A stretch of DNA of 64,000 nt from Convolutriloba macropyga (GCF_964194025.1 NC_134482.1:7688001-7752000), one strand, 5' to 3'; counted from the first letter of the stretch, positions 2,460 through 62,400 are shown. Made by a program: numbers and translations. Notes: generated from the letters alone by a model not told the origin.

Positions 2460-4100
2460 ATCAATGACCGAGCTTCCCATAATCAAGAATCAAATTGAAC
2501 AACCTTTTAAGGCCAAATTAAGCAGTGAAGTTAGAGTTGCAAGACAAGCGAAATTTTAAGCTACATTCTATCGCGGCCATATTCACTTCTACACTTTCTT
2601 CAGCATTCATATTTAGTACCCATTATTAGTACGTGATCATCACACATGAAGTGAAATTCACCCGCGAACTATCTCAAAATAAGGATCTTAAAATTACGAA
2701 TTAACTTTGCATGATTTTTTACAATTGGTTTGTGAATCAGCCCTTTGTGATACAAAATATTCGAAAAAAAAATTCCAAATGGTTAGCAAACGTATGATGA
2801 CATCAAATTTGCACTAAAAATTTAACGTTATAGAAAATTGCTCAAACTTTGTTGACATCCGTATCTACAACCAGTCACAGATGCAATTTTGACATCTAAA
2901 CCCACGTTACTAGCAGCTTAAAAGGAGCTTGAAAACTACCAAAAATCAGCAGAAATTTAAATTTAAAATTATTATTTTGACAAACAGTGTGTATTGAAGC
3001 ACACTTTCTTGAGCGTTAAATTACGTGTTACTCTGTATTGTTTCCTTAAAACAACTTAGTGATTGTACAGTTATAACTTAACTTTGACTTGTTGCAAGGA
3101 GAATTAACTTTGATATCCTCAACATTTCCTTTTGAGGAAAAAAGTTGCTCGATCTGGCTTTAACGAAGCCTAGTCTAGTTTAATAGTGTTGTTATCAAAA
3201 CTAATTGAGATTATGGATTGAATTACAAATGTAAACGTTCATAGTTTCAGTTAGCGAACTTGGGTAAAATACTGGTTTTAGTTTGTGAACGTTACAGACT
3301 TGAAAGCTTGCAGAGCAATAGCCAAATTTAATGCTAATTTTTTTTTCGGGATTTCTCTGTTTTGGATTATAGTTTGAGTTATTAACACAAACCCAGAAAA
3401 ACTTAGAAATATTTTGTATTCTGAGCAAAACAAGTTGTTGATTAGCAAAGCTGAGCGATTAATCAACGAAACTAAATGAAAATCAAGTATTGCGCCAATA
3501 ATCTACAGCATAGAGGATAATACAGATCACAAAAATTAACCGCAAAAACGTAATATGCGGACAAATTTGAAACCGCCTAAACGAACTGGGTGGTCTAATG
3601 TTTTCCTTGTCTTGAATAGAAGAACAGCCGTTACATTTGCTCCGCTGAACCGGACAGTGAAAATCAACCTGCTGTCCAAACTGTTGAGGAGATTGCTGAG
3701 GGCCCCAACCAAAGAAAATCAAACGATTTGACAGCAAAACACCAGTGAGGCGAAAAGAAAAGAGCAGTTCATCAAAGAAATTGAAGTGCAAAAACTGTTT
3801 GATTTGATTATCAAAGCAAAAGCGAACAGCAACCAGGCAGTCGAAGCCCGATCAGCAAAGAACAGATTCAATCAATAGTTCACACAAACAAAAAGAAATT
3901 TCAAGATTTAGTGGAGGAAGTCAACACTAAACTTAGGCTTGGCTGCAAAATAATTCAAGATTCAGGTCGACCCAATATACTTCAGCTACTCTAAAAACAG
4001 ACTGTTCATCTATTAGAAGAAGAAATAACCCTGGAACTGCAGCGTTGAAACAAGCTTGTACCCTGCACAGGAGAATTTGTTGAAGAAAATCTGAAAGAAG
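2460..4100 (+). mobile_element. BEL/Pao remnant: 5' LTR (~2460-3635) plus degenerate gag start
   Basis: Diverged reverse-complement similarity to the BEL LTRs at 23230-24059 and 30831-31646. LTR ends ...gccgttaCA (3635), followed by PBS-like TTTGCTCCGCTG. Downstream translation KAKANSNQA matches the 30614-30862 frame. Confidence 0.7.
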
Positions 4101-5155
4101 AAAGGGGTGCAAAGCGAATTTGGATGATCATTGGTTTGAATATATAGTCAAAAGCACGCAACCAGCAATGAATGCAAAGCAGTCTCAAATTGTTAGCAAA
4201 AGCAGGAGAATCAAAACTCAGTTGCCCAAACAGTACACAATTCAGCTACCCATTTATGTATTAAAACATTAAAATGGTTTACGCTTACTGATCCTAGCAA
4301 ATTCACGCCCCATTTTTAGACATAGTTTAATTATACGAACGGATCAAATATAAACAGATCAATTGTTTTGTATTAGAACTTCAAGAAAATGCAAATATAA
4401 CAGATGAGCTCTCTGTTTATAGGACAACTGGCATTAGTGTAACGGCTGCTCTTCCAATCGGTTTTGACCAGGAAATTTTTACATCGCCCATTTCCTTCAA
4501 AATCTTTTGTTTTTGCGGTTCGCTTTGCATTTGTAACTGTATATCCGCTATGTTTTTACAGTTGCACTACAAATTTAGATCATAACTATTTGCTAATTGT
4601 AGATTTTTCACCAGTGAAATTGGATTGGGTTGCTAGATATCACACAAACCGCGATCTCTTTATGTATTCCAATTCCATCCGATTTTAAAAACAAATCAAA
4701 GACAAAGTTACTTGTCTACAACCTTATCGTTAAAAATTTATTAGATTTAGCTTAAGTTGCGTTTTACCCTTTGTACTCACGAGTTGAAATTCCAGAAACT
4801 GGGGTTCGTAAGGGTGGGATCGTAGATCGGGTTGGAAGTAAATCGTAGATACAGGACATGATAACAAAAAACATACTGCTCAAGAACAACTTTCAATACA
4901 ACACACAGTAGAAATTTAATGCTAAGGAATATTTCCGTACAAAACACGGTAACCAGCTATTACTGCTGAAACAGATTGTTTTTTTGCTATATTTTGTTGA
5001 GTTTTTCAGAAAGCCGTTTGCTATGGCTGCTACTTTTAGCTGTGGCATTGTTGGATTGCTGTTGTTATTGTTTTCCTCCTTTTTTTCGCCTTATCACGTG
5101 ACTATGACTGCACTAGTAATTATAGCTAAAACTGGGCTACTACGATGACTAATGA

Positions 5156-9032: not shown

Positions 9033-11552
9033 GTAGTAAAAGACTTCAATTTACCAATATAAGGGGTTTCAACATATCGTTAGATGAAAATCTAAGAATA
9101 TGGTATTGATACAAAAAATTAAAAAATGTATATATTTTACAAAATTAAGATCGACAGAAAGTACATCGGCATCTAATGGACCAAGTGCAGTGTAATTTAT
9201 ATCAAACTGAGAGTCACGAAGGATAATGAAGAACTCTCTCAGGAGGCGTTTGTGGTCCGCTGGTGGTTTTAAAATACTTAAAGGCCCCATCTCGATAAAA
9301 TCATTTATATAAACCTGTACCCTTTTGAAATAGGACTTCGATGTTCGTTGCTTTATTGTTGGGTTGATGACAAGTTGATTAGAGTGTTCGCTTCTTAAAA
9401 TCCCGGAATTGATCTTGAGCGTGAAAAAATCCTCAAACTTAATACAAGTTTTCCCTAACATAATAGAAATAAAAAATCGAAGATCTCGCTCAATAAGCTG
9501 ATAGCAGATGGGTATGTTGTCTGAATTTTGTAGGGCTGAAATGTAATTGCGTTTTCCATTACACCAGCACAATCCTCTCCAGTAGAATTTTTCAAATGAT
9601 CTCAAGTGACCAATATCGGGAAACAACGCTACAGAGGCATATAGGAGAACAGATAAAACGCAGGATGTGTACAAATTTTGCATGACTTTGTTTGGTAGGC
9701 TATATGGCACATTGTGTCTGAGACAATTGAAACTTCTTTGAGCTTTCGTTAGCTTATTACGTATATGCCTGCTCCACTTCAAATTGTTACAAATTTTCAA
9801 CACCTAAAATCGGTTGTATTGTGCACTTTCTGTAAAGAAATCTCGTCTATGTTAAAATCGCATTTGTGTGCTTCTGACATATGAATATAAACACATTTCT
9901 CTGCGTTAAATTTCAAAGAATTTTCTGAAGACCAGTCTACAGGTTTATTGAGATCTCTCTGACAGTCAGTAAAAAAGTCAGAGGTGGCACATGAGAACTT
10001 GGTATCATCTGCAAAACAAAAACAGCTTGAACTTTCCGGTAGTGATGACATATCATCGATGTAAATTTAAAATAGCAGAGGTCCAAGAACACTACCTTGA
10101 GGAACACCACTGATAATCGTAACTTCATATGACAATATTCCATTGATGTTAACACGCTAGTTTCTTCCGGTTAAGTATGAGAACATAAGCTACAAGAAAT
10201 CATCGTCAAGACCGTACAACGATAGCTTTTTAAGCAATATTGCATGGTCTACAATGTCAAAAGCTTTCGCAAAATCCAAGTAAATGATAACCCGTTCGAC
10301 GTTCTTGTCATAGTTTGTATAAATTTTGTCAAGAAAAACGAGCAGTTGAGTAATTTTTGAGTGTCTTTTTCTGAAGCCGTGATGCCTACTGCTCAATTTA
10401 TAGTTGACTTTCGAGAAAAGGAAATCAAATAGAATTTTCTCCAATTTTAATGATAATCGAGGTAATATGGAAATGGGTCTATAATTCTCAACTCTGGTTT
10501 TTGACTCCTTCTTGTGAATTGGGGTTATGATGGAACACTTCCAAATTGTTGGCCACTTACGGAGAAATAGGATGTTACTGAACACTAAATGAACTAGAGG
10601 AGCTAATGTAACAGCGCAGTTCTTGAGAACGAATGGGGGAATACCATCTGCAACAGCGATAGTGCTTGGAGGGACGTTTTCAAGTAAAATGCCAACCTGT
10701 GCAGGTGTCACGTGTAAATCAGACAGCTGGATATCAGGACTCTCAATTTGGTATTTAGCAGTGAATTTTTAACATTTTAAAAGCATCAATTGTTGTAAAG
10801 TTATTTGTGGACTCAATAAAAGTCATTTTAGCCAACTCAATGAAGATTTTCACATCGTTTTCAAGATTTTCGAGTTTGGTAGAGGAGCACTTTTTGCGTC
10901 TTGCTGTTTCAAGTTTGTTGATCGTGTTTATCGTTAGGGAGCTATAAAAGAAGGGGAACTGCTTTCTCTTCCTTCGTTTTCTAACAAGGCAGTATGAAAC
11001 TAGATTTAGTAATTCTGCTAGCCAGATTTCAGCAAAATTTTTGTCTGCGCTGAACAATGAGAAGTGCAGCGAACACACGCTACTTTTGAATAAGTACTCA
11101 TTAAGGGTACAAGCCGAAAACTATGATGAAAAACTCGATAAAGGGATCGGCTTTAAATTGAGGTTCACTAAAACAGGGTTGTGATCGGAAAGCGGGAAAT
11201 CCAATATTTCGTAGTCATAATCATCCGAGTGTGTAACAAAAACTAGATCAAGAATGTTGCCTTTTCTGTGTGTCGGAGTTCTGATAATCTGCTCCAAAAG
11301 CAAATCTTGAGTCAAAGAATCAACCAAATCTTGTTCATCTGCAATTCTAGCTGCGCACTCTTCCCAATTTATGTGGGGCAAATTGAAATCTCCCAAAATT
11401 GCTACACTTAGATCTTTTGGCGAAGTGGCAGCTGCTTGTTTTATATCATTGAACTTTTTAACTATAAAACTTCCAGCCGTTGAAGTTGGAATGAAATACT
11501 TGGAGCCCCTGGGTGGTAAGTATGAAATGCTTGGCGCCCCTGGGTGGTAAGG
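9033..11552 (-). mobile_element. 5'-truncated LINE A (CR1/L2 group) inserted in ORF1 of LINE B
   Basis: APE motifs LGDFNLPHINW, GNILDL, SDH. RT motifs NYRPISIL, YLDFAKAFD, FADD. Frameshifted C-terminal W-x-x-x-CRC-x-x-C motif near 9150-9190. Confidence 0.9.
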
Positions 11553-11757: not shown

Positions 11758-14700
11758 AGTGCTTGAATGACAACGGAAACACTACTTACGTGCCTTTGAA
11801 GAAAGTTAGCGAAGTTCAAGTCTTAAAAACCCAATGAAACAAAACAATTCAAGCGGAATCGCTAATTAAAGGACCAATAACAAAAGAACCGCTCAACAAT
11901 TATCGGATGGTGAAAGACTCAGCCGACTGTATGCCAGTTTTTCTCCTGATATCAACTGATATGAAAAAGCAATTTTTTAGCAAGAATGCCCAAGGATGTT
12001 CGATGGAAGGTTACAATGGCTTCTAAAAGAAGTCAAGCCATCAACTAACTGCCAATACTGAGGAAAACAAACTCAATTATTTATGTTTCTGTCATGGTTC
12101 AATATTGAGCAAATAGAAAAAACACCTAGAGTGGTAAAGAGACATTTTGGGAATTTTTTTTCTATTTTTGAACTTCAGAGACCTTTCGAGTTTCACCAGA
12201 AGCGTCCCTACTTATGTTAATGTTTCACTCTTTTTTTAAATAGATGTCGGACACAGGCAGTAAAGGATTTCACGATTTTCTGCGAATCTTTATACAATTG
12301 CCTGAAATGTGAATTCAAACACGAGTTAGTTTGTCTTTGACATGGATATGAACCGAAACTTCATTTGAATAATTGGAATAAAAAGTGATACGTTAATTGA
12401 AAATGAATTATTGAGCTTTTGAGGAGTTGCGATTTTCTACATTTCCTTCCTTTGAAACTTCAATTGAATAACTGGAATAAAAAAGATACGTTTAATGCAA
12501 ATGATTGATTGTGCTTTTGAGGACTTACGATTTTATGCATTTCGTCTAAAGACATTTGATTTTTTCGCCTACCTTTAATGGAATATAAAATAGAAGCGAC
12601 CATATAAGTCTCAGTGATTTTTAGTGAACTCGTGGCGCTCAACCAAACTAAGAATAAAAATTTCAAAAACAAACTCATTTTAAGTCAATTTCTAAGAAAT
12701 ACTAAACAACGGGACTTAAACAGCATGGATTGAAAGTTGATAAGCGAACGTAATTTAACTACCTATACACTTTATTAAGTAAACCTGTTGGCTGAAGTAA
12801 AAAAAAATTAGGTAACAACTCAGTGAGCGTCTCTATATATCAAATGCAGCTACTACTGCAACACATTCGCTCTCTAAAACAAAACTTTGATGAATTCTCA
12901 GCAACTTTGGAAACTATAAAGCAACCCGAGATTGTTTGTTTTAGTGAGACTTGGCTGAATCAAGATATTAGACCTGGTTTATAATAAATTGTAGGTTTCA
13001 ATTCATTGCGCTATACTAAAAGAACAAAGAGAGGGGAAGTTTTTGCGTCTCTTTACAGTACTAAGCTTAATCATTAATTGTTTTTTGTGAAACAGGAGGA
13101 CAACCTTCAAATTCAAACAACAAAAGTAACCTTAGAAAATAAGAAGAAACTTCATGTTACAGTTCTAAAGAGGACACCGAATAGCTCAATCTGCTCTTTT
13201 TTGAACATTGTGGAGCAATACTTGACGCATATATACATCAAGCAACCATCAAAACATTTAGTATGCGGTGATTTTAATATTCTTATATTGACTAAAAAAG
13301 AGACAACAAACGTTTAACTCGTTTTCTACAATGTTTTGACTTTCATTTATTAAATGAAAAGATACCTACCAGAATTACAAACAATTCAACCTCCTGTATT
13401 GACTTAGCCATTGCAAACTTGAAAACAGAAAGGAAAGTCGAACAATTAAAAAGTCAAGTGATCATTCCGCATTATTCATAGAACTAGATTTTCTGAGTTG
13501 CAAAAACTTTAATAACACCAAAAACCAAAATGAGAACATGGAACAAGTTAAATAAAATAAGTGTTGCTGGATGTAAACTACTGACAATGGAATAATTTTA
13601 TTGAAGCTGCGCCGGGCTTTAAATTCAACGAAATTGAGGAAAACTGGCAAAAACTTATTGGAATAATTAACAAACTCATTGGAAAATTTTTATATTGTCC
13701 CATCTACGAAATCTCAAAATGTAAACAGTTGAATAACTAGCAGAATTAGCAATGCGCTTTCAAAGAAAAAAAAATTTCTCCAGTAATACATTAAAAATCG
13801 AATTAGACTAGTGCAGAAAAATTTAAGAAGAAAAATGAATTTGTAAAAATAATGTACAGGGAGGCAAAATCCCAATATTATAATCACAAATTGAACTGCT
13901 CAAGAAATAAAAACTTCACAAATTTTTCAGTGTGATCAACGATTTAAAAGCCAAAGGCGCTAAAAAGGTTTCTGATTGCCCAACAGCAGACGATTTCAAA
14001 AAAATCTTCAGCACGATTGAAAAAATTTTGTCAGAAAATATGACAATGGTAATCACAATGAAATTCGTTGCTTTGACCTTACTTTACATCTAGAGATTTG
14101 CAATGCAGTAGAGGATTTCACAATTATTGCCAGCCTGAAAGAAAAAAAGTGCAGATATTTTTGAACACTGTGATTACCTTCTGAAGAAACTAAATCCTGC
14201 AATTTGTGAATGGATTGCAATGTTGGTAAACCAGTGTTTTCTGTCTGCCTACATTCCTAAAATTCTAAAAACAAGCAAAGTAATTCCTATATACAAAACG
14301 GGAAAAACAACGATGTGAATAACAATCGCACAATCTCTATCTATCCGGCACTGGCAAAAATTTTTGAAAAATCTCTTTTTTCCTGATTTACCGATTTCTA
14401 ACTAAATACAAATTATTAAACCTGATCAATTTGGATTCAGGAACAAAAGAAGTGGAACTGATGCTATTTTAGTCGTAACAGAGAAAATAAGAGCACTTTT
14501 GTCGGAAAGAAATTTTTCAAAATGAACATTAATAATTTATTTAACCAAATCTTTTAATACATTAGATCACAAAGATTTGCTTGCCAATTGTGAAAATAAC
14601 GGTTTGAGGGGAGTTATTGGAAACTAGTTACGCTCTTATTTAGAAAACAGAAAACATATTGTGGACTTGAATAGACAAGAATCTTCGATAGAATTAGTAA

Positions 14701-17442
14701 GCACTGGGGTTCCCCAGGGTAGTGTACTAGGTCCTCTCTTATTTCTCTTTTATGTCAATGATCTGAAAGTAGATGAGAAAAACTCTAATTTGACTCTTTT
14801 TGCTGACGATTGTAACTTGGTTCACAATGACATCTTAGCCGGAGGCAACAAAGGTTTAAATATGAAAATAAAATTTGGGTTCAAAAACAACAGACTAACA
14901 CTAAACAGCGACAAAACTGTTATAATTTTTTTTTCGAATCAAATTGCTCAAAACGGAAAAAATTTGTTGACTGAAAAATTTGCGAAAAAAAGCAGATACC
15001 TTGGAATGGAAACTGACAATCTACTGATATTTGATATACACTGCAAAAACTTGCTAAGTTGTGCTTCTAAGGTAGCATCTATTACATATCATATGCGTGC
15101 ATTTTTCAACAGCAATCAGCTATACCAAGTTTATAGAACATACCTTCAACCAACTTATCAATATGGAGTTTTTATTTACGGCACCGCGAACAAATCACTT
15201 TTAGTCAATATTGAAAACCAACAAGAACTGATAATTCGAAACTCTTTCAAGCTTTAAAAATATGAAAGCCTGGCTAAGATTAAAGAGAAATTTAAAATCT
15301 GCTAACTTAGAGAACTACTTATCTATGAGTTGTTTAAGATGTTAATAAATTTCTGAGACGAGAGTCGGAATACTCCGATGTTAATTCTTTTATAACAGAA
15401 TAAGAAGGCTCAAATTTGCAAAACAGCACTAGTAGGCTGAAAATTTTTGAGAAACAGAGGAAAATTAACTTCGAATTATGAAAGAAAAATTGAGAATAGT
15501 GTACTTTTCAATAAATGTGTTCAGTTGGAAAAAAACAATTTGATAGCGTTATTGAGATGCAAAAAAGAGGGGCTGGATAAATTGCTGCACGATTTCCGGG
15601 ATTTGTATATATGTGATAATGATTATCTCTCAAGTTTATTCTGGTAGCATTTTTTCTCTATTCAAAACAAAAACTTTCAGAGCTTATTTTTAAGGCGATG
15701 AGGCCATAAATCAGAAGTCATGTTTTTCAACTTTTTGTAATCATCATTGCAATGAGACTCATGAATTGTTTGCTCAGGAGACATCACTCGAAGGACTATA
15801 TGTCTGCATGATGCTCTCTCAAGAAGTTGTAATATTTGCTAAATATATACTTTGACTTTATTTTCAGCCTTTTGAATAAAAATATTATTATTAATATTAA
15901 TATTATTATTATTAATTTTAATTGCCTGCAACGGGATCCAGGATTCTGTACTGATGCAGAGTGACAAAAGAGCATATTTTCGTCAACTATGTCCAGTAAA
16001 ATCCCGTAGACGATTATTCAGAAAATTGACTGAACATGATGTTTTGAGTATCTCAGTATGTTCAGAGACAGTCCAGGTGAAAAGAAAATTTCGAACGAAA
16101 ATTTAAAGGTTTGGATAATGCACAATGCTTTATAAGAGCATATCTCTGCGCTTATTCCAGTTAATACCCGTTATAGTTCTCGTTATAATACCCCGATATA
16201 TTACAAGTTAAAATAGCAATTTTGATGAAATCTTTCTTGCGAATGTCTAAAAAGTTTTTTGTCCATAGTAGATAACAATTTTTCTGAAGGTTAACTGCGG
16301 AATTTGTGAAGAAAATTCATTACGTTCAAGGTAATCACAGAATTGATCCCCATTCTTTTCATAAGATGTTCAGGACTATAATCTGAATTTTACCATGAAA
16401 TGTCGCAGAAAATCCCCTGATCAGATCCCTGCTCATAGAGAAAACTAGAATGAAAGTTTCATGATTCATTACTGATATATGATGACGCTCAACTCCGGGA
16501 TGCGAGCAAGAATTCTTTTCCTGATTAAAAGGTACTTCTATTAGATCCATAAACCTTTAAGTCGCTATCAGCTGGTAACAATTGTAGGCCGAGTGAAAAC
16601 AATTCTAATAGTAATTAATCCCACCGAGCTCACTGAGCATATGATATTACCTGTTGCCTAGTAACATGCTATAAAAACGAATAAATTTTGTAAGTGTGAG
16701 GCATAAAAAAACTGGTTGAATTTGGTCAGACAGAATAGAACCTAATTTTTTTTAAACATATCTTTCATAGCAGCAGTAGTTATTCCACATGTTTACAAAA
16801 GGATAAAATTAGAGTAGATACGCTTAGATTTGAGTTTCATGAAATAATCATTTTTAATCGAAACTGGAACCCGGCACTGGTGGTCAAGCGACTGATTTGT
16901 CTTCGGTTACCACAGCTCAAGAAAGGTAGGAAAAAAGAAATCTTCTTCAATCAGCGGCCTAATATTCTTGTAGATTCATTATGACGGTGTTGCAACACAT
17001 GGAATTACGTTGCATTATATATTCAATTTTATCAGTTTAGCAAATAAAGCTCAAAAAGAAGGCAAGTAGTATCAATGTACTTCAAAAAATTGTTTCTTTT
17101 TTCTAAACCTAACAAATAGTTTTCGAAATTGTTAGTTCTTTTGTACTTTTCGTTTTCAAAACCAAATGGATGAATTTTTTTGCAAGAATTGTAAATGAGT
17201 TTTGGAAGGAAATTCTAATTTTTGATTTAAAAAAACTGCTCTCAGAAAACCATTTTGATGGAAATACGAACATAATGTTTGATTAAAGTTAAATCCCGTA
17301 AATGAAAAAGGAAGAGAACTCTACTCTTCGTACCGCTCTTGGCAAGAGTTTAGTTAGTTTCGAACCACCTATTTTCGCTTCGTTTTTAGCCCAATATACT
17401 TGCAACCGTGCATTTATTACTTAATTAATAATTACCAAAAAT

Positions 17443-40924: not shown

Positions 40925-41052
40925 NNNNNNNNNNNNNNNNNNNNNNNNNNNNNNNNNNNNNNNNNNNNNNNNNNNNNNNNNNNNNNNNNNNNNNNNNNNN
41001 NNNNNNNNNNNNNNNNNNNNNNNNNNNNNNNNNNNNNNNNNNNNNNNNNNNN
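40925..41052. other. Assembly gap (128 N)
   Basis: Run of N. It hides the left terminus of the palindromic element. Confidence 1.
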
Positions 41053-41499
41053 AAGACAGGGGGGGGGGGGGGTAAAAAGACGTACCTATGTATAAAGATT
41101 ACCTATAGCCTATTTTCATCAATTTTCTAAAGACTTACCTAAAAAAGAGAGTGAGAACAATAGACCTGTCATCTTAACATAATTACCCAGGGGTAATTAT
41201 CTTAATTACCCCCAGGGAAATGCATCCAGTTTTCAACTCTAATGCACTTCAGCTAATAATTATCTACTTAATAAAATATATCTGCGGAACTTTTACTTTA
41301 AGCATTTTCTCATTTTATTCATTCGCGCATAGTTATCACAATTACAACTTTTAATCATTTTTCACAATAATATTCAAACATTTTTCATTGTAATTCACAA
41401 GAATTTACCCGATTTTGTGCTGATATACGTAAATTTTGGCAATTTTACCATTTTTTCGCCAAAAGTTCCCAATTCTTGTAAAATAATACCAAACTCTTA

Positions 41500-41830
41500 C
41501 CAAAAATTACCGAAAATACTGACCAAAAAGACCCAATTCCTGGCAAAAAATTACGTAATTTCTGACAAAAATACCCAATTATAACAAAAAAATACCCAAT
41601 TTTTGTCAAAAAATACCCAACTCTGAAGCGAAAATACCTTATTCTTGCCAAGAAATACCCAATTACTGGCAAAAAGTACCCAATTCATCCCAAAAAATAC
41701 ACAATTCTGGTCAAAAAATACCCAATTCTGGCCAAAATATAACTATTTCTTGCCAAAAATTAACCCCATTTGAGCTCAAAATACCCAGTTTTATCAGCAT
41801 AATTCAAAAAATACCCAAATATCAAAGAAA
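41500..41830. repeat. Subterminal ~21-bp AAAAAATACCCAATT minisatellite (mirrored at 48250-48600)
   Basis: Repeated unit visible in both arms, with different copy numbers. Confidence 0.9.
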
Positions 41831-42392
41831 TTTACTCAAAATTTTCCTAAATTGTTCTCATTTCTTCCCATTATTCCCACAACTTTGTTTTTTCAGAACT
41901 TTACAAGTTTTAAAAAATTTATTTTTATAAAGAAAGCTCTCACGTGATCCCATTAATTTTATCTGGATTTAAATGACCTCTGCATTGTGACTACAAAATA
42001 ACAAATATACTGTGTCATCTGTTAATGGGTCTAAAGTTCTCACGTGATTTGACAATTAGTCGCTACATTATCGTCACAATTACTCATAACAGTACGAGTA
42101 CATCATAATAATCCACAATTACGTCAAAGTGTTGTCATAATTACGTCATAATTACGTCACAATTAAGTCACTCTGTCGTCACAATTATCATTATGTCGTC
42201 ATAAATACGTCATGTTCAACAAAGAACTTTTCATTTCGGTCTTTTTTCATTTTTCTGATTTACAGATTTGAGTGCAGTTGAGTACAATAAACTTTACAAC
42301 TTCTGACAAAAAATTTACTTCATCGCAAGTTCGATTTTAACAGTTTTTTACTACCCCTTGCTCACTTCTAATCTCACAACTTATTTTCAGAG

Positions 42393-45097
42393 ATGCCTCG
42401 AAAGTCGGACCAAAAAGAACTTTGCAATTCTTGCGATAAGTCTATCTTGAAATACAATATGAGTAGACATCAAAAGCTTCACGCAAGAGCTTGCCCACAA
42501 TGCTCCCAGTCATTTCCGGACGACGAGAAACTTCAGCGTCACATTGATTCAAAACATGCAGCGTCACTCGTTCAAGAGAAAAAGTTTTCGTGCAGAAGCT
42601 GCAATTTATCGTTTTCCACATACTATCAACTTATTCATCATAAACGAAACAATCACCAGCATTCTGCTCCAGTGGCTTACGATGACGTTGACTTATCTAT
42701 TTACGGAGAATCCTCCGCTCTTCACAGTGAGCTCGAAACCGTCAAACACTTTTTGCAAGACTCGATGCTTGAATTCTCTAGAAAGAAAGTACACAACTTC
42801 AAGTTAGTCGACCTCAGCCACGAAATAGTGATCAATAAATTGGATTTTGTTTACAAAGACTTACCCAGTTCAGCTAAAATCAATATTTCGTTTGGATTCG
42901 TGTGCATAACTCTGACGAAATTCGATACTATTACGCAGCAGATAACAATCCCGTATTCATGAATCCCATTGTTCTCTCTGATGTTTCAGATCTCAGTTTT
43001 ATCAAATCGAAATTGAGAAGTGAAGAACTTCTTCCCAATCTAATTAATCATAGCCCAGACACAAAGTGGAAATTTTATGGCGTTACAAATGTCACATTCT
43101 TTGTATTTTCTTCTCAGTGGTGTTCCGCTTGGATGCATTGAACAACCTATTCCCTCAGCCCTTAGTCAAAAATCCTTGGTTAAATGTTTTATTTCCGATG
43201 GAGAGAAAAAACCCTACCAAGACAACTTGTGTATGATCCGTGCACTGACCTACGAAATAAATGGCAGCGATAAGCTACAGCAAAGTACGTTGAAATTGAT
43301 GCAGTCGTTTCTCTCAGCAACAAAGAAAGATGGCAAGAGCTTTCAAGGAGTACATGAAGATGATATTCACATTCTTGAAGAGCTGACTTACCAAAACATT
43401 CAAGTTTACACAATTTTCATTAACGATCCGTCTGAAATATATACTTACTCGTCGATCCTGCTTAAAGCGTGCACAGACAACATCTTTGTTGAGATATGAG
43501 AATCATATCTGTTGGACAGCAGACATCAATAAGTTCTAAAAGAATTCCGGTGCTATGTATGCGATCAGTTTTTCGATAGATCAAACAATTTGTTGGTCCA
43601 TCTCAGGAACACACAACATAGGTATCCCTCAGGAGCTTATCAGCTGTCAGAGACTGTTTTCCGATTGGCTGGAAGTCGTTAATATTATGGTTCCAGCAGA
43701 ACTGAGATCATTTTCTCACTTAATTGTTTTTCGATTTTGAGTCAATAACAGTTACTGACATGACTCTCAACAACACCGAATTGACTTCTTGGATTGGGAA
43801 ACATGTTCGCATTAGTGTGTCGATATCTTCTAAGCTTCTTGAAGAGATCATTTTCCTTTGCAAACTCAGATCCGAACCAGTTAATTCGAGATTTTGTGTC
43901 TAACCTTGAGTTGATATCGCAGAAAAGAGCAATCCATATGAAGGAAAAATTGCAAAACTTCATTTCTCGACTTGAAGAAAACTATTGGCTTGCTCGAGAC
44001 AAAGTTCCCGTGCGAGAGAACGAAGGACTCGTCAATGATGATGCAGGAACTGGCGAGGATGAAGAGGATTCCAATTCTACTAGAGACCGAAGAGAGCTCA
44101 AAATTCTATCGAGTTTGAGACAAGATTTGGAGAATTACTACAGTGCAATCCCCGTGTTTGGTTTCAACAGCTCGCGATACGACTTAAGTTTGATTAAAGA
44201 ATATCTTTTGCTACATTTACTCACAGAGAGAAATGTTGTTCCCAAGGTGATTCGTACGGGGAACAAATATATGGAATGAACTTTCTTGGCTTGCAATGTC
44301 TCGACATTTTGAACTTCCTGGGAGGAGCTACAACTCTGGTTAATTTTTGAAAGCGTATGAAGCCAGTGAAGAGAATGGTTTTTTTCCCCTTATGAGTGGT
44401 TTGACAGTGCTGAAAAGTTGAATGAGAACCAACTGCCACCAATTGAAAGTTTCTGGAGTAAGTTGAAAAACCATAACGTCTTGTCAGTCGATTACGATAA
44501 GTTCATGGTTACAAAAAAGGGGGAATTGAAGAAAAGGAAGCTTTAAAAAAGCTGAAATTAAAAAACAGTTCCCAAAAATGCAGAGGAAAACTATCGGGAA
44601 CTTCAAAACATTTGGGAAAAGGAGAACATGAACACATTTCGCGATTTTCTCAAGTGGTATACCAACAAAGACGTCGTGCCCACTCTTGATGCGATGACAA
44701 AGATGATTCAATTCTACCACTCAAAACAAATTGATATGTTGAAACTGGGCTATACGCTTCCCAACTTGGCAAACAGAATTCTCCATTCGTCAACAGATGC
44801 TGCATTTTTCCATTCTGCAAGCAAGACAAGGAATATGATAGCTATATCAGAAATTGGCTGACGGGAGGACCCTCGATTATCTTCACCCGATATGCAAAAG
44901 CAGGCGAAACCAAGATTAGAGAGTCCGAAAATGTGTGCAAGTCTATTGTGGGCATTGATGCGAGTCAACTTTACCCATTCTCAATGACCAAGGAAATGCC
45001 AACGGGACTATACACAAAAATGGGAATTCAATGACGACACTGCAAAGTTCCACCAAAAAGGAATTGGAGGAGTTTTTTGAGCAGCAGGTAATAGAAT
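42393..45097 (+). pseudogene. Protein-primed DNA polymerase B with N-terminal C2H2 zinc fingers, left arm; frameshifted and truncated after motif A
   Basis: Three C2H2 fingers (42393-42962), Exo II VFGFNSSRYDL, Exo III FLKWY..KDVVP, GGPSIIFTRY, motif A GIDASQLYPFSM at ~44951-44986. Confidence 0.88.
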
Positions 45098-47667
45098 ACT
45101 TGCACACATTTTTCGGACTCTCTAATCTTGGTTTCGCCTGCTTTTGCATATCGGGTGAAGATAATCGAGGGTCCTCCCGTCAGTCAATATCTGATATAGC
45201 TATAAAATTCCTTGTCTTGCTCGCAGAATGGAAAAAATGCAGCATCTGTTGACGAATGGAGAATTCTGTTTGCCAAGTTGGGAAGCGTATAGCCCAGTTC
45301 CAACATATCAATTTGTTTTGAATGGTGGAATTGAATCATCTTTGTCATCGCATCAAGAGTGGGCACGACGTCTTTGTTGTTATACCACTTGAGAAAATCG
45401 CGGAATGTGTTCATGTTCTCCTTTTCCCAAATGTTTTGAAGTTGGCGATAGTTTTCCTCTTCATTTTTGGGAACTGTTTTTAATTTCAGCTTCTTTAAAG
45501 CTTCCTTTTCTTCAATTCCCCTTTTTTTGCAATCTATGAACTTATCGTAATCGACTGACAAGACGTTATGGTTTTTCAACTTACTCCAAAAACTTTCAAT
45601 GGTGGCAGTTGGGTCTCATTCAACTTTTCAGCACTGTCAAACCACTCATAAGGGAAAAAACCCTTCTCTTCACTGGCTTCATACGCTTTCAAAAAATTAT
45701 CCAGAGTTGTAGCTCCTCCCAGGAAGTTCAAAATGTCGAGAAATTGCAAGCCAAGAAAGTTCATTCCAATATATTTGTTCCCCGTACGAATCACCTTGGG
45801 AACAACATTTCTCTCTGTGAGTAAATGTAGCAAAAGATATTCTTTAATCAAATTTAAGTCGTATCGCGAGCTGTTGAAACCAAACACGGGGATTGCACTG
45901 TAGTAATTCTCCAAATCTTGTCTCAAACTCGATAGAATTTTGAGCTCTCTTCGGTCTCTAGTAGAATTGGAATCCTCTTCATCCTCGCCAGTTCTGCATC
46001 ATCATTGACGAGTCCTTCATTTTCTCGCACGGGAACTTTGTCTCGAGCAAGCCAATACTTTGATTCATGTCGAGAAATGAAGTTTTGCAATTTTTCCTTC
46101 ATAAGGATTGCACTTTTCTGCGATATCAGCTCAAGGCTAGACACAAAATCTCGAATTAACTGGTTCGGATCTGAGTTGCAAAGGAAAATGATCTCTTCAA
46201 GAAGCTCAGAAGATATCGACACACTAATGGGAACATGTTTCCCAATCCAAGAAGTCAATTCGGTGTTGTTGAGAGTCATGTCAGTAACTGTTATTGACTC
46301 AAAATCGAAAACAATTAAGTGAGAAAATGATCTCAGTTCTGCTGGAACCACAATATTAACGTCTTCCAGCCGATCGAAAACAGTCTCTTGACAGCTGATA
46401 AGCTCCTGAGGGATACCTCTGTTGTGTGTTTTCGGAAACAATTTCTGAGATGGACCAACAAATTGTTTGATCTATCGAAAAACTGATCGCATACATAGCA
46501 CCGGAATTCTTTTAGGAACTTATTGATGTCTGCTGTCCAACAGATATGATTCTCATATCTCAACAAAGATGTTGTCTGTGCACGCTTTAAGCAGGATCGA
46601 CGAGTAAGTATATATTTCAGACGGATCGTTAATGAAAATTGTGTAAACTTGAATGTTTTGGTAAGTCAGCTCTTCAAGAATGTGAATATCATCTTCATGT
46701 ACTCCTTGAAAGCTCTTGCCATCTTTCTTTGTTGCTGAGAGAAACGACTGCATCAATTTCAACGTACTTTGCTGTAGCTTATCACTGCCATTTATTTCGT
46801 AGGTCAGTGCACGGATCATACACAAGTTGTCTTGGTAGGGTTTTTTCTCTCCATCGGAAATAAAACATTTAACCAAGGGATTTTTGACTAAGGCTGAGGG
46901 AATAGGTTGTTCAATGCATCCAAGCGGAACACCACTGAGAAGAAATACAAAGAATGTGACATTTGTAACGCCATAAATTTTCCACTTTGTGTCTGGGCTA
47001 TGATTAATTAGATTGGGAAGAAGATCTTCACTTCTCAATTTCGATTTGATAAAACTGAGATTTGAGTCATCAGAGAGAACAATGGGATTCATGAATACGG
47101 GATTCTTATCTGCTGCGTAATAGTATCGAAATTCGTCAGAGTTATGCACACTCTGCAGCACGAGTCGAAACGAAATATTGATTTTAGCTGAACTGGGTAA
47201 GTCTTTGTAAACAAAATCCAATTTATTGATCACTATTTCGTGGCTGAGGTCGGCCAACTTGAAGTTGTGTACTTTCTTTCTAGACAATTCAAGCATCGAG
47301 TCTTTCAAAAAGTGTTTGACGGTTTCGAGCTCACTGTGAAGAGCGGAGGATTCTCCATATATAGATAAGTCAACGTCATTGTAAGCCACTGGAGCAGAAT
47401 GCTGGTGATTGTTTCGTTTATGATGAATAAGTTGATAATATGTTGATAACGATAAATTGCAGCTTCTGCATGAAAACTTTTTCTCTTGAATGAGTGACGG
47501 TGCATGTTTTGAAGCAATGTGACGCTGAAGTTTCTCGTCGTCTGGAAATTACTGGGATCATTGTGGGCAAGCTCTTGCGTGAAGCTTTTGATGTCTACTC
47601 ATATTGGATTTCAAGATAGTTTTATCGCAAGAATTGCAAAGTTCTTTTTGTCCGACTTTCGAGGCAT
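45098..47667 (-). pseudogene. pPolB with C2H2 fingers, right arm (inverted copy); ends just before motif A
   Basis: ATG at 47667. Fragments include CYVCDQFF..LVH, LIVFDFESI (Exo I), GFNSSRYDL, FLDILNFL, KGFFPYEWF and YNNKDVVP. Confidence 0.88.
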
Positions 47668-49069
47668 CTCTGAAAATAAGTTGTAAGACTAGAAGTGAGC
47701 AAGGGGGAGTAAAAAATCGTTAAAATCGAACTTGCGGTGAAGTAAAGTTTTTGTCAGAAGTTGTAAACGTTATTGTACTCAACTGCACTCAAATCTGTAA
47801 ATCAGAAAAATGAAAAAAGACATAAATGAAAAGTTCTTTGTTGAACATGACGTATTTATGACGGCATAATGACGTAATTGTGACGACAGATTGACTTAAT
47901 TGTGACGTAATTATGACGTAATTATGACAACACTTTGACGTAATTGTGGATTACTATGATATACTCGTACTGTTATGAGTAATTGTGACGATAATGTAGT
48001 GACTAATTGTCTAATCACGTGAGAATTTTAGACCCATTAACAGATGACACAGTATATTTGTTATTTTATAGTTACAATGCAGAGGTCATTTAACTCCAGA
48101 TAAATATAATGGGATCACGTGAGAGCTTTCTTTATTACAATAAAATTTTGAAAACTTGTAAAGTTCTGAAATAATGAAATTGTGGAAATAATGGAAGAAA
48201 TGAGAACCAATTTAGGAAAAATTTTGAGTAAATTTCTTTGTGTGTATTTTGAGCTCAAATGGGGTTAATTTTTGGCAAGAAATATTTATATTTTGGCAAG
48301 AATTGGGTATTTTTTTGATAAGAATTTGGTATTATCCACGAATTGGGTTCTTTTTTTAATGAATTGAGTATTTTTGCCACGAATTTTGTAATTTTTGACC
48401 AGAATTGGGTATTTTTTGGGAAGAATTGGGTATTTTTTGCCAGTAATTGGGTATTTCTTGGCAAGAATAAGGTTTTTTCGCTTCAGAGTTGGGTATTTTT
48501 TGACAGAAATTGGGTATTTTTTGTTATAATTGGGTATTTTTGTCAGAAATTACGTAATTTTTTGCCAGGAATTGGGTCTTTTTGGTCGGTAGTTGGGTAA
48601 TTTTTGATAAGAGTTTGGTATTATTTTACAAGAATTGGAAACTTTTGGCAAAAAATGGTAAAATTGCCAAAATTTACGTATATCAGCACAAAGTCGGGTA
48701 AATTCTTGTGAATTACAATGAAAAATGATAAAATAGTATTGTGAAAAATGATTAAAAGTTGTAATTGTGATAACTATGCGCGAATGAATAAAATGAGAAA
48801 ATGCTTAAAGTAAAAGTTCCGCAGATATATTTTATTAAGTAGATAATTATTAGCTGAAGTGCATTTGAGTGGAAAACTGGATGTATTTCCCTGGGGGTAA
48901 TTAAGATAATTACCCCTGCGTAATTATGATAAGATGACAGGTCTATTGTTCTCTCTCTCTCTTTTTTAGGTACGTCTTTAGAAAATTGATGAAAATAGGC
49001 TATAGGTAATCTTTATACATAGGTACGTCTTTTTACCCCCCCCCCCTGTCTTGCTTAGCCTCTACTACT

Positions 49070-49087
49070 TATATTTATATATATAAT

Positions 49088-49133
<46 letters not shown>
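49070..49133. repeat. (TA)n microsatellite at the Polinton right flank
   Basis: Direct observation. Confidence 0.95.
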
Positions 49134-59499: not shown

Positions 59500-62400
59500 G
59501 CTGGTAAAAAATGGAATTTATCGATGCTTTCAAATTAAATTGATTTCGCGCCGCCGTTTTAATACAAGCTAAACGGTTCTTGATTGTTTGAATTAGCCTT
59601 TCAACTAGTCCAATCGCTCTGTGATCGTGTATTGGAGCTTCAATTAGCTGTATATTATTTTGATTACAAAATGCTTTATTTTGGTGACCCGTTTGGCATC
59701 CAGCTTGGTCTTATCTAATTGAACGGGGTATTCCGTGTAGCAAAACATACTCTTGAAGAAATTTCAAAATGTTATCTGCATTAGCTCTATACCTCTGCGG
59801 TTGGAAAGTTAGAAAATCGATCTAAACATGCAAGAAAGTATACTTCTTGATTTTTTTCATTATAAACTGATCCACCAAAATCAATTTGGATTTCTTCATT
59901 TGGTACTTTTCATAACTTTAATGGTTCCCGTTTGCTAGCAGGAATAATAGACTTGGAATGTTTACCGATTTTAACACAGGAATTGCACTTTGCCGTCTTT
60001 GTAACTATGTCCCGATGCATGTAGGGCCACCATGCATGTGTCGCCATATCTGTCATCCCCCAGCTTCATGGGTGGGTTGCATGAATGGCTTCCACGTACG
60101 CATCTTTGATCGAGTTCGGGATGGCTATTCTTTCATCGATGCACACGCATCCATTCTGGACGTGCAAATACTTCCAAAAAGAATAGTTATATGGTGAAAT
60201 TTGTTTGCATCGAACCTCGTTTTACGTCAGGATGCAGTCTCTTATTTCTTTGAGGATCGCGTCCTTGGTGGTTAGACTGGCCATCAATGTGCTGGAGGAA
60301 ATTTTGGATAGTGCAAAATTGAAGGCATCTGTATACAGATCGTCGGTTGAAGGTGACGTTACTGTTGTAGTATCAGTATTTGGAGTAGAAAGTGTTGCTT
60401 GCACTGCGGGAGCCGTTGATGGTCCTGCCTCATCGGCAAATCTAACTTTGGAGGGTGTCGATTGTTTTACTTGCATCAGAGCTTCTTCATCAGAGATCGA
60501 CACAATGAGGACACTGTTGAACTTGTTAGCAATTCGTTGGAAATTATTCAATTTAGTAGGCAACTTATCAGTAGAGCGGTTCAATGCAAAAAGCGAGTGA
60601 GGAATGTTTACTGTCTCGATTTGGAGATTAGAATTTGAGTTAGTTGGTTCTAATTTGCTAATTGAATTATCATTCTCCGTAATTGCATCATATTCTGAAT
60701 TTCGCGGTGCGAATTCACTACAAAATTTACTATTGGAATTTGGAGTATTTGAGGCTTGTTTTATAAGCAAAATCGACGTAATTCTCGGCATTTAATAAGA
60801 AGCGTTTCGCGCTGCGCTTAATCACATCAAATTTAGCAACTATGAATTGCTCGTCATAAGCAGATATATTAACGGCTTTTTGTTGCGGGTCGCGAGAGAT
60901 AGAGTCAACTAATCCCATTTTTGAACTAGGAAGATGATCGATCGTAAAATCAGAAGGTAGTAGTCGATCTACCCAACGTGTTAGTCGACTATTGTAAGAT
61001 TTATTAGCTCTATTGTCTCTCATGATCAAAAGCAAAACCCTATGATCAGTTATTATAGTGAATAGTTTGTCGTATAAATAATATTTGAAATGTTCAATAG
61101 AGCAGACAACGCCCATTAGCTCGAGCTCACTGGTGCTATATCTATCTTCCACAGAACTCAGAAATCGCGATGCAAATGCCACGGTGTGCCAACTATTTGG
61201 AGTTCGTTGTTCTAATGCGCAACACAAGCCTTTTGGACAGGCGTCACGTTTTATACGTGTTCCTAAGTCCGGATAAAAATGCTTATTTTCGGTTGTTTCG
61301 GCAATCTTCTCTTTTATCAATTTGAATTGTTTCTTATGTTCATCCCTCCAAATAAATTTTGTATTTCTCTTTAAGCAGAGGTTTAAGTGGATAACATAAT
61401 TGCGACAAGTTCGGAATAAATTTGCCCAGATGATGAACTGATCCCATAAAGGATCTGAGTTTTTTGAGATTTGAAGGTGACGTTAATTTTTCGATTGCAT
61501 CCGTTTTATTCGAAAATGGTGTAATGCCTGTTTGAGTTATGCTATGTCCAAGCCATTCAAATTTATCTTTGCAAAATGACATTTCGCAAGATTTATTCGA
61601 AGATTTTCTTGATCTAATTTGATCAAACATTACCGAACAAGATCGAGATGTTGTTCTATTCCTCCTCTGCTCACTATCAGTATATCGTCCAAAAAGCAGA
61701 ATGTATTGTTTAAGCCGGCGAGGGTACAATCTATTGCTTTTTGAAATTCGGCTGGCATATCCTTAAGACAGTAAAATCCCGGTTTAAAACGATATGTTCC
61801 GGTCATATCTGCGCTTACAAGATTGAAGTTACAATGGCGGGTCGTATCATTATGTAAATTTAATTGACTGTAAGCGTACTGCAAATCGAGAGTCGTAAAA
61901 TAAGCCGTCTCTTGCGGCGCGGTTGACAGTGTTTGTGAAATCGTCTGGATTAGCAAATCTATATTCGGCATTTGATATTTGTTTTTTGTGGATAGCTTTA
62001 TTCAGGATTTTGGAATCTGATGCTATTTTGATTGATTGATCCTTTTTGACTGTAATGACTATCGGAGATATGAAGAACTGATTAGAGCAGTTTAATAGTT
62101 TTTCGATATGTCCTTCATTCAACAATTTTTCAAGTTCGATTTTAGTTTTTGGTTGGAGATGAATCGGCACTTTCCTCCCTTTTTGATGTGTAACTCGATA
62201 ATTTTTATGAAATTTTGAAATGACTGTATGGTGCGTCGATTTTCCTATTCGTGAGATTAGTTCAGGAAATTCTTTTGCCAGTGATTTTTTGATTGCACAG
62301 GGTGTTTCTATGTTATTGATTTCTGTATTTGGGCAAGTTTTCTGTGAAATTGTCATTCCCAATTGATCAAACAGGTCTCGTCCAAGAATGGGCCGAAATC

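What the first reader, a model, noticed from the sequence alone, without database searches (positions are those of the whole stretch)
41053..49069. 8-kb palindromic Polinton: an integrated snap-back genome made of one terminus copied twice
Seen: the whole element is one inverted repeat with ~3.9-kb arms and a 155-bp spacer. Each arm is terminus, ~1.35 kb non-coding DNA, then pPolB pointing inward. No integrase, ATPase, capsid or protease gene is present. The right end is AGTAGTAG. The arms differ by many substitutions and multi-base indels (for example ~33 bp near 41785 and different minisatellite counts), which argues against a simple read fold-back artefact. Established: Polintons replicate by protein-primed strand displacement from TIR origins and integrate via their termini, and linear DNA viruses produce snap-back defective genomes. 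Inference: a pPolB template switch produced a defective genome with two intact ends that was integrated in trans, possibly a distinct class of non-autonomous Polinton.
Basis: partly seen in the sequence, partly recalled or inferred. Interest (0 to 1): 0.9.

Follow-up and report, generated by a model that had tools for sequence, protein, structure and literature searches.

The report
Palindromic remnant of a Polinton element
An 8-kb stretch made of two mirror-image copies of the polymerase end of a virus-like Polinton/Maverick element, joined head to head at a 7-base microhomology. It is real, old and decaying, and it records a fold-back copying error, but nothing shows that it was a free "snap-back" genome or that it founds a new class of mobile element.

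Summary
Window 41053-49069 is one inverted repeat with arms of 3,890 and 3,972 nt. At aligned positions the arms are 95.9% identical, with 27 indel events.

Each arm runs from the element terminus through about 1.35-1.4 kb of non-coding DNA into an inward-pointing, broken N-terminal part of the protein-primed polymerase gene. No other Polinton gene occurs anywhere in the 64-kb window.

- **Right end:** 49069 is a true element terminus. Independent relatives start with the same AGTAGT end next to unrelated flanks. One complete 14,973-bp relative has 226-nt terminal inverted repeats (TIRs) and a perfect 6-bp target duplication.
- **The "spacer":** it is not foreign DNA. The left copy simply runs about 160 nt further into the polymerase gene.
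- **The junction:** it sits on a 7-bp inverted microhomology that intact relatives also carry (chance about 7e-4). This is the signature of a fold-back template switch.
- **Not a read artefact:** outgroup polarisation gives 65 changes derived in the left arm and 72 in the right. Changes since the split are neutral by codon position.
- **Unresolved:** the switch could have happened on a free replicating genome or in an integrated copy, with re-entry through TIR homology. Both routes predict the same product and the same target duplication.
- **Hidden:** the left terminus lies in a 128-N gap.
- **No sign of a class:** none of 12 loci of related copies is palindromic.

The parts
40925..41052 (.). 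128-N assembly gap abutting the left arm. It hides the outermost ~17 nt of a left terminus and any target-site duplication.
41053..45104 (+). Left copy of the polymerase end of the element. It is collinear with positions ~18-4368 of the complete 14,973-bp relative L007.
41053..42392 (+). Left non-coding terminal region. It holds ~210 nt homologous to the family TIR, a 21-nt minisatellite (41461-41770), 11/22-nt repeats with ACGTCA cores (42114-42213), and a conserved leader.
42393..45104 (+). Left remnant of the protein-primed polymerase gene (about codons 1-897 of ~1,430), with N-terminal C2H2 zinc fingers. It is broken by 18 frameshifting indels and 0 in-frame stops, counted against the uninterrupted ORF of L007.
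44943..45097 (+). The 155-nt 'spacer'. It is the single-copy continuation of the left polymerase copy (the loop of the fold-back), not foreign DNA.
45098..45104 (.). Junction. These 7 nt belong to both copies: an inverted microhomology whose two halves lie ~155 nt apart in intact relatives.
   Evidence: chance P about 7e-4
45098..47667 (-). Right remnant of the polymerase gene (about codons 1-842). It is broken by 6 frameshifting indels and 3 in-frame stops. Three of the frameshifting indels are shared with the left remnant.
47668..49069 (-). Right non-coding terminal region. It holds the same parts as the left one, with a longer 21-nt minisatellite (48269-48638) and 11/22-nt TGACGT repeats (47847-47948).
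49062..49069 (-). True element terminus (AGTAGTAG read on the minus strand). Homology to independent relatives starts exactly here.
49070..49133 (.). Host flank: a (TA)n microsatellite. The first 6 nt would be one half of a target-site duplication if there is one.

Best explanation
This is a genuine, old, non-autonomous remnant of one Polinton/Maverick copy, rebuilt by a single fold-back (copy-back) template switch.

**Mechanism**
1. DNA synthesis ran from the polymerase-end terminus inward for about 4.37 kb.
2. The 3' end (7 nt) then paired with its own reverse complement 155 nt upstream, on the nascent or displaced strand.
3. Synthesis ran back out to the terminus. The result is terminus, polymerase stump, 155-nt loop, inverted polymerase stump, terminus. 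The other ~10.6 kb (integrase, ATPase, protease, capsid genes) was lost.

**What is shown**
- The structure.
- The true right terminus.
- The collinearity of both copies with intact relatives.
- The microhomology at the junction.
- Equal, neutral decay of both arms since they split (about 2% per arm), with patchy arm-to-arm gene conversion.

**What is inferred**
The venue of the switch. I put about 0.45 on an in-situ event in an integrated full-length copy: a replication or repair template switch in which the returning strand re-enters the chromosome through the 226-nt TIR homology at the far end. I put about 0.35 on a free snap-back genome that was then integrated in trans.

**What it does today**
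It cannot replicate or integrate on its own. If it is transcribed from either inward-facing promoter region, the RNA would fold into a multi-kb hairpin.
For: - **Inverted repeat and junction:**
- **Microhomology:** the 7 bp are present in relatives L002 and L004 at both parental sites. The chance of 7 bp or more is about 7e-4 in 200,000 simulated junctions.
- **Human parallel:** fold-back inverted duplications show the same features, a single-copy spacer plus 2-8 bp of inverted microhomology (PMC3907307).
- **Right terminus:** confirmed against independent termini of L001, L003, L005, L007 and L008. Position 1 of the right arm aligns to position 1 of L007.
- **Parent family:** L007 is 14,973 bp with 226-nt TIRs and a 6-bp duplication TATTTC. 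It carries pPolB, rve integrase and A32-type ATPase, plus a weak match to adenain-like proteases.
- **Both arms evolved:** 65 changes derived in the left arm and 72 in the right with outgroup L002; 35 and 37 with L007.
- **Neutral decay after the split:** codon positions 28/23/32, p = 0.48. Changes shared by both arms against L007 are 100/69/213, p = 3e-20, which shows selection before the split.
- **The arms are each other's closest relatives:** 96.6% against at most 86.5% full-length to any of the 11 related loci that match.
- **Flanks are not mirrored**.
Against: - No reads were available, so the join rests on the assembly alone.
- The left arm begins at a contig edge next to a gap.
- The left terminus and the target duplication are unseen.
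- This is a single instance: no second copy in the window and no palindromic copy among 12 loci of related copies.
- The left remnant has more frameshifting indels than the right (18 against 6), although substitutions are balanced. Some of these may be assembly errors near the contig end.
Confidence: 0.78

Rival explanations
1. A polymerase template switch during extrachromosomal protein-primed replication made a snap-back defective genome with two intact ends. That genome was integrated by an integrase supplied in trans. It may represent a class of mobile palindromic non-autonomous Polintons.
For: - The product ends exactly at the terminus, as expected when the template ends there.
- The loop plus microhomology fits copy-back by a strand-displacing polymerase.
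- The terminal AGT reiteration varies between 2 and 3 units among copies, as expected for sliding-back initiation.
- Snap-back defective genomes are known for other linear DNA viruses (AAV: PMC8235507, seen).
- Adenovirus incomplete particles are enriched for the left genome end (PMC12090768).
- Polintons with ~2-kb gene-bearing TIRs show that ends do get copied across (bioRxiv 10.1101/2025.02.07.637071).
Against: - Nothing separates it from the in-situ route. Both give the same structure and the same target duplication.
- Three frameshifting indels are shared by both arms. This hints that the source was already a decaying resident copy. One of them lies in a gene-converted tract, and the other two lie in poorly aligned stretches.
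- No second copy and no other palindrome were seen in 12 loci of related copies. The claim of a class has no support.
Confidence: 0.35
2. Assembly artefact. A fold-back chimeric read, or a mis-join of two haplotypes or copies, at a contig end.
For: - The left arm is the first 3.9 kb of a contig, next to a 128-N gap.
- Related assemblies show duplications at contig ends (L002, L003).
- The left arm has an excess of small indels.
Against: - A fold-back read would give identical arms, or would put all the differences in one arm. Here derived changes are 65 against 72 and 35 against 37.
- Only about half of the 1-2-nt indels lie in homopolymers.
- The join has a precise 7-bp microhomology at two sites of one gene only 155 nt apart. 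A random mis-join would not produce this.
Confidence: 0.08
3. Two separate insertions of related elements facing each other, followed by a deletion of everything between them.
For: - The family is high-copy: protein clusters have up to 94 members.
- A microhomology-mediated deletion could also leave 7 bp at the join.
Against: - It needs two breakpoints that happen to fall 163 nt apart in the same gene of two ~15-kb elements.
- The arms are far closer to each other (96.6%) than to any sampled relative (at most 86.5% full-length).
- The arms share three private frameshifting indels.
Confidence: 0.06
4. An ordinary chromosomal fold-back inverted duplication at a double-strand break (breakage-fusion-bridge type) that happened to start inside the element.
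For: The spacer plus inverted microhomology is the same signature (PMC3907307; PMC10622511).
Against: - Such events copy back through the flanking chromosome. Here the right arm stops exactly at the element terminus.
- The flanks are unrelated to each other.
Confidence: 0.03

Closest known systems
Polinton/Maverick elements (autonomous, 15-20 kb; Kapitonov & Jurka 2006, Pritham 2007; PMC4028283)
   Same: - The same polymerase gene and the same terminus.
- Relatives carry pPolB, rve integrase and A32-type ATPase, a weak match to adenain-like proteases, 226-nt TIRs with 5'-AG...CT-3' ends, and a 6-bp target duplication.
   Different: - The window element keeps only the first ~4.2-4.4 kb of the ~15 kb, and has it twice, in mirror image.
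- It has no integrase, ATPase, protease or capsid gene.
- Both polymerase stumps are broken.
Snap-back / copy-back defective viral genomes (AAV snap-back genomes, PMC8235507; copy-back genomes of RNA viruses, PMC11077978)
   Same: Two inverted copies of one genome end, a single-copy loop taken from the parent sequence, and a junction that fits a polymerase template switch.
   Different: - Those are free, helper-dependent molecules seen in virus stocks.
- This one is a single chromosomal copy about 4% diverged between its arms.
- There is no evidence that it ever existed as a free molecule.
Mu killer of maize (partial inverted duplication of MuDR; PMC3440606)
   Same: - A natural inverted duplication holding two copies of a TIR and the 5' part of the element's key gene.
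- The predicted transcript is a multi-kb hairpin.
   Different: - Mu killer belongs to a cut-and-paste plant transposon and is transcribed from a flanking gene.
- Its silencing effect is demonstrated. Here expression and small RNAs are unknown.
Fold-back inverted duplications of chromosomes (PMC3907307; PMC10622511)
   Same: A single-copy spacer and a short inverted microhomology at the spacer-inversion junction.
   Different: - Those extend for kilobases to megabases into chromosomal DNA and are coupled to terminal deletions.
- This one is bounded by an element terminus.
Lepidopteran polintons with ~2-kb gene-bearing TIRs (bioRxiv 10.1101/2025.02.07.637071)
   Same: One end of the element, genes included, has been copied onto the other end.
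   Different: Those elements keep the full central gene set and are polymorphic insertions. Here the copied ends are all that is left.

Membership tests
Polinton/Maverick | Protein-primed family B DNA polymerase gene | tested here: met
   - The best window piece matches PF03175 only weakly (E = 8e-4, 18.8 bits, below the cut-off).
- The relative L003, 77% identical, matches at E = 2.8e-9 (36.8 bits against a cut-off of 25.8).
- Both arms are collinear with residues 1-892 of the L007 polymerase.
- There is no sequence hit to solved structures.
Polinton/Maverick | Retroviral-type (rve) integrase gene | tested here: not met
   Absent from the window. Present in relatives L001, L002, L004, L005 and L007-L010.
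Polinton/Maverick | A32/FtsK-type packaging ATPase and adenain/Ulp1-type protease | tested here: not met
   - Both are absent from the window.
- In relatives the ATPase passes the cut-off (27 bits against 22.8).
- In relatives the protease matches only weakly (E = 0.003-0.007, below the cut-off).
Polinton/Maverick | Double and single jelly-roll capsid protein genes | not testable with these tools
   - They are absent from the window.
- The candidate 412-aa and 267-aa genes of relatives give no Pfam hit.
- Proteins of the loci could not be handed to the structure predictor.
Polinton/Maverick | Terminal inverted repeats with 5'-AG...CT-3' ends | tested here: met
   - L007 has 226-nt TIRs, with 202 nt at 100%.
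- The window's right end starts at the same AGTAGT.
- The left end of the window element is hidden by the gap.
Polinton/Maverick | 6-bp target-site duplication | not testable with these tools
   - It is met in relative L007 (TATTTC on both sides).
- In the window, the left boundary lies in the N stretch, which is not to be filled.
Snap-back (copy-back) defective viral genome | Two inverted copies of the same genome end around a single-copy loop, with a template-switch junction | tested here: met
Snap-back (copy-back) defective viral genome | Arose on, and propagates as, a free replicating molecule that depends on a helper | not testable with these tools
   - No data on free molecules are available.
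- It is a single chromosomal copy.
- None of 12 loci of related copies is palindromic.
Chromosomal fold-back inverted duplication (breakage-fusion-bridge type) | The duplication runs on into flanking chromosomal DNA | tested here: not met
   The arm ends at the element terminus, and the flanks are unrelated.
Hairpin-RNA silencing locus of the Mu killer type | Inverted partial duplication of the element that includes a TIR and the 5' part of its gene | tested here: met
   The 755 nt around the junction fold at -560 kcal/mol (z = -48).
Hairpin-RNA silencing locus of the Mu killer type | Transcribed, yields small RNAs, silences related elements | not testable with these tools
   No expression or small-RNA data are available.
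Fold-back read / assembly artefact | Arms identical, or all differences carried by one arm | tested here: not met
   Derived changes are 65 in the left arm against 72 in the right, and 35 against 37.

The most novel reading that the evidence does not exclude
The element is a germ-line fossil of a copy-back defective genome of a Polinton virus. If so, it is sequence-level evidence that these elements pass through a free, self-replicating linear stage whose products can be integrated in trans. As a palindrome with two inward-facing promoters, it may also act as a hairpin-RNA source against its own family, as Mu killer does in maize.
Probability: 0.3. Interest if true: 0.8.

Novelty: new variant of a known kind. 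Interest (0 to 1): 0.5.

Why it matters
How Polintons/Mavericks replicate has been inferred from their gene content, not observed. A palindromic derivative whose junction carries a clean copy-back signature is one of the few kinds of sequence fossil that could bear on this. That holds only if it can be shown to have formed off the chromosome.

Whatever its origin, it shows that these elements can lose their whole central gene set in one step and still keep two proper ends. It also gives a candidate hairpin-RNA locus against a high-copy virus-like family.

As it stands, it is one decayed copy whose origin is ambiguous. It deserves a genome-wide census, not a new category.

Tried and rejected
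**Tests that ruled something out**
- *Fold-back read artefact.* Rejected by outgroup polarisation and by the indel context.
- *Mirrored host flanks.* None found.
- *Other copies, or other Polinton genes, in the window.* None found.

**Searches that found nothing**
- *Palindromic copies among relatives.* I inspected 12 loci from ENA assembly ERZ25071359 and found none.
- *Sequence match of the relatives' polymerase to solved structures.* No hit.
- *Literature.* The held library turned up no palindromic or snap-back Polinton with the terms I used. This was not exhaustive.

**Methods I dropped**
- *Counting breaks by chaining tblastn matches*. The matches ran through out-of-frame stretches, so I replaced this with codon-phase counting on DNA alignments to an intact relative.
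- *The bacterial promoter scan*. It has no meaning for a eukaryotic element.

**Steps I did not attempt**
- Filling the N stretch, or looking for the orthologous locus to read the left end.
- Searching the window's own genome. It is in none of the searchable collections: the best protein hit to the window ORF is 84% identical.
- Structure prediction of the capsid candidates. Proteins of the loci are not accepted by the predictor.
- Identifying the host species.

- In my reasoning I briefly recalled short terminal motifs of known viruses from memory.
- Early in my reasoning I walked through ORF coordinates and frames of the broken gene from the ORF list.
- Searches printed the sizes of the three shared indels, and one search also printed their spacing. 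Neither printed their places.
- DNA alignments of the sequences as they stand remain in /scratch.
- No repaired, joined, consensus or ancestral sequence was built.
Full report

Yes. An inverted-repeat search tiles 41062-44942 against 49046-45098 without a break.

- A three-way alignment with an outgroup gives 3,683 identical and 157 substituted positions (95.9%).
- There are 27 indel events totalling 165 nt. The two largest (51 and 35 nt) lie in the non-coding minisatellite part.
- The single-copy stretch between the arms, 44943-45097, is 155 nt.
- The only N run in the window, 40925-41052 (128 N), touches the first base of the left arm. The left arm is therefore cut about 17 nt short of where its terminus should be.
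- Nothing else in the 64-kb window resembles the element.

**2. What the arms are made of.**

- Each arm runs from the outside in as about 1.35-1.4 kb without a long reading frame, then a reading frame pointing inward. The start codons are at 42393 (+) and 47667 (-).
- The first open piece carries two C2H2 zinc fingers. One piece matches the organellar/viral family B polymerase profile only weakly (PF03175, E = 8e-4).
- A search with the longest open piece of the right arm (278 codons) found 40 related proteins at 53-84% identity. All carry the source label 'ena', and the nine whose contigs I fetched all lie in ENA assembly ERZ25071359, on long contigs with 36-65x in their names.
- I fetched 12 such loci.
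- They show the full parent: a polymerase of about 1,430 codons, an rve integrase, an A32-type ATPase and a weak match to adenain/Ulp1-type proteases.
- The polymerase call is firmer in the relatives. L003 matches PF03175 at E = 2.8e-9, above the curated cut-off.
- L007 is a complete element of 14,973 bp. It has 226-nt terminal inverted repeats, ends reading AGTAGTAGTAGG...CCTACTACTACT, and a perfect 6-bp duplication, TATTTC, on both sides.
- These features make it a textbook Polinton/Maverick, and the window element is a derivative of that family.
- A tblastn of every L007 gene against the window hits only polymerase residues 1-892. No integrase, ATPase, protease or other gene is present.

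**3. The right end is a true terminus.**

- Aligned against independent ends, homology starts at the same AGTAGT in every case, and the sequences outside it are unrelated. The ends compared were the near ends of L001, L002 and L003, the far end of L005, and both ends of L007 and L008.
- Position 1 of the right arm aligns to position 1 of L007.
- The number of AGT units at the tip varies between two and three among copies. Short terminal reiterations of this kind are what protein-primed replicons with sliding-back initiation show. That rests on established knowledge of phage and adenovirus replication, and I quote no letters for it.

**4. The "spacer" and the junction.**

- The 155 nt are not an insert. 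The left copy stays collinear with relatives L002 and L004 through the whole stretch, up to 45104, and includes a conserved polymerase motif. The right copy, read inward, is collinear with them down to 45098.
- In L007 coordinates, the left copy ends at about 4368 and the right copy at about 4203.
- The 7 nt at 45098-45104 can be assigned to either copy.
- In intact relatives, this heptamer and its reverse complement lie about 155 nt apart in the gene.
- A nascent strand ending in the heptamer can therefore pair with its own upstream complement, or with the identical displaced strand. It can then be extended back to the terminus.
- In 200,000 simulated junctions on the same sequence, 7 nt or more of such microhomology occurred with a frequency of about 7e-4.
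- A single-copy spacer plus 2-8 nt of inverted microhomology is the documented signature of fold-back inverted duplications (PMC3907307).

**5. Artefact or biology?**

A fold-back chimeric read would give identical arms, or would put all the errors in one arm. The data show neither.

- Polarised with outgroup L002, 65 substitutions are derived in the left arm and 72 in the right, with 20 ambiguous. With L007 the coding part gives 35 and 37.
- Transitions to transversions are 76:81.
- Only about half of the 1-2-nt indels lie in homopolymers of four or more.
- Differences between the arms fall evenly on the three codon positions (28/23/32, p = 0.48). Differences that both arms share against L007 fall 100/69/213 (p = 3e-20).
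- So the lineage was under protein-level selection until about the time the arms split, and both arms have drifted neutrally and at equal rates since.
- Differences are over-dispersed along the arms (index of dispersion 2.6; longest identical run 267 nt). This is the pattern of occasional arm-to-arm gene conversion.
- A mis-join of two different copies cannot be excluded without reads. It would not, however, explain a precise microhomology join between two sites of the same gene 155 nt apart.

**6. State of the genes (counts only).**

Counts are against the uninterrupted 1,039-codon reading frame of L007 (the multi-relative alignment is).

| Polymerase remnant | Frameshifting indels | In-frame stops |
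|---|---|---|
| Left | 18 | 0 |
| Right | 6 | 3 |
| Shared by both arms | 3 | 0 |

- The three shared frameshifting indels are private to the two arms among six sequences.
- One of them lies in a tract where the arms are almost identical (1 difference in 300), so it may have been spread by conversion. The other two lie in divergent, poorly aligned stretches.
- The hint that the source copy was already damaged when the palindrome formed is therefore weak to moderate.

**7. How it most likely arose.**

The shown part is a single fold-back switch at the heptamer, followed by copying back to the terminus. Two venues fit this.

During protein-primed strand-displacement replication of a linear genome, the nascent strand snaps back. 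The product has two identical, proper ends and is integrated by integrase supplied in trans.
- *(b) In the chromosome.* During replication or repair of an integrated full-length copy, synthesis switches at the heptamer and runs back through the polymerase-end terminal region. The new 3' end is then identical to the far-end TIR (226 nt, 100% in L007), so it re-enters at the far end by homology. Everything between is lost.

Both routes give the same structure, keep or create proper termini, and leave a 6-bp duplication.

- For (a): the product stops exactly where a linear template ends.
- For (b): the shared lesions, the fact that this is a single instance, and the commonness of template-switch rearrangements inside resident transposons. 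Mu killer in maize is one example (PMC3440606).
- My split is about 0.45 for (b) and 0.35 for (a), with the rest going to an artefact or to two insertions.
- A plain breakage-fusion-bridge fold-back is disfavoured. It would have copied on into host DNA, and the flanks are not mirrored.
- Two facing insertions plus a deletion would need near-symmetric breakpoints. That reading is also contradicted by arms that are 96.6% alike but at most 86.5% like any sampled relative over the full length.

**8. What it does now.**

- It is non-autonomous and decaying.
- Both arms keep the conserved upstream region of the polymerase gene. This region holds 11/22-nt repeats with TGACGT cores and a conserved leader, about 90% identical to L007.
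- If either side is transcribed inward, the RNA crosses the junction and folds into a long hairpin. The 755 nt around the junction fold at -560 kcal/mol, z = -48.
- That is the architecture of Mu killer. Whether it is expressed is unknown.

**9. Comparison and novelty.**

- It is a member of the Polinton/Maverick family by descent. It fails the autonomous definition: no integrase, ATPase, protease or capsid genes, and about 8 kb instead of 15-20 kb.
- It has the form of a snap-back defective genome and of a fold-back inverted duplication. Membership of the first kind needs evidence of a free molecule, which I cannot obtain here.
- Polintons whose ~2-kb TIRs contain genes are already described (bioRxiv 10.1101/2025.02.07.637071), and so are polymerase-end remnants in C. 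elegans (PMC11414722).
- I found no report of an all-palindrome derivative in the held library. That search was not exhaustive.
- I rate it a new variant of a known kind, with interest 0.5.

**10. Limits.**

- No reads were available.
- The left boundary is hidden by the N stretch, which was deliberately not filled.
- The window's own genome is not searchable.
- The relatives come from another assembly and are 77-86% identical over the coding part.
- The host species was not identified.

Noticed in passing
L002:1-4700 and L003:5300-12573: Two related loci carry direct tandem duplications of host flank, terminus and the first part of the polymerase gene. The period is ~2.85 kb and the identity is 99-100% in L002. 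Both lie at contig ends. They could be assembly artefacts or real tandem copies.
   Followed up: partly
L004:10806-13439 (residues 664-743) and L007:15216-18332 minus strand (residues 909-988): The polymerase of relatives holds a stretch like a DUF559/Vsr-type endonuclease (22.1 and 20.7 bits against a cut-off of 20.6). It lies just beyond the point where the window's copies end. This fits the report that polinton polymerases carry inserted homing-endonuclease domains (PMC11161782).
   Followed up: partly
window 42393-42962 (+) and the mirror part of the right arm: The N-terminus of this family's polymerase carries two C2H2 zinc fingers (PF13894, E = 2.8e-9). A further finger lies deeper in the relatives' protein.
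   Followed up: no
window 42114-42213 and 47847-47948: Repeats of 11/22 nt with ACGTCA/TGACGT cores lie 180-280 nt upstream of both polymerase start codons. They are followed by a leader that is ~90% conserved in L007 and ends in a splice-acceptor-like TTTTCAG just before the ATG. L007 has no ATG at that spot, so the true 5' end of the gene may be spliced.
   Followed up: partly
window 41461-41770 and 48269-48638: A 21-nt minisatellite in the terminal non-coding region has different copy numbers in the two arms. Another subfamily (L001/L005) has a 128-nt minisatellite at the same place, and there it is part of a ~1-kb TIR.
   Followed up: partly
L008:5260-5300 and L008:19700-19760: The two ends of this otherwise complete-looking relative differ from each other (88% over 96 nt). 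They are not flanked by a matching 6-bp duplication. It may be a recombinant of two elements.
   Followed up: no
L005:14359-20750: A block of three genes (193, 284 and 131 aa) is repeated in tandem inside this relative.
   Followed up: no
window 49070-49133: A (TA)32 microsatellite abuts the right terminus directly.
   Followed up: no
window 10193-10711 (-), 14661-15254 (+), 60733-61320 (-): Fragments of reverse transcriptase and RNase H. The rest of the window looks like retrotransposon debris of a eukaryotic genome at about 31-43% G+C.
   Followed up: no
window 41186-41216 (mirror ~48906-48936): A small palindrome with a 14-bp stem lies about 150 nt from the terminus, in both arms.
   Followed up: no
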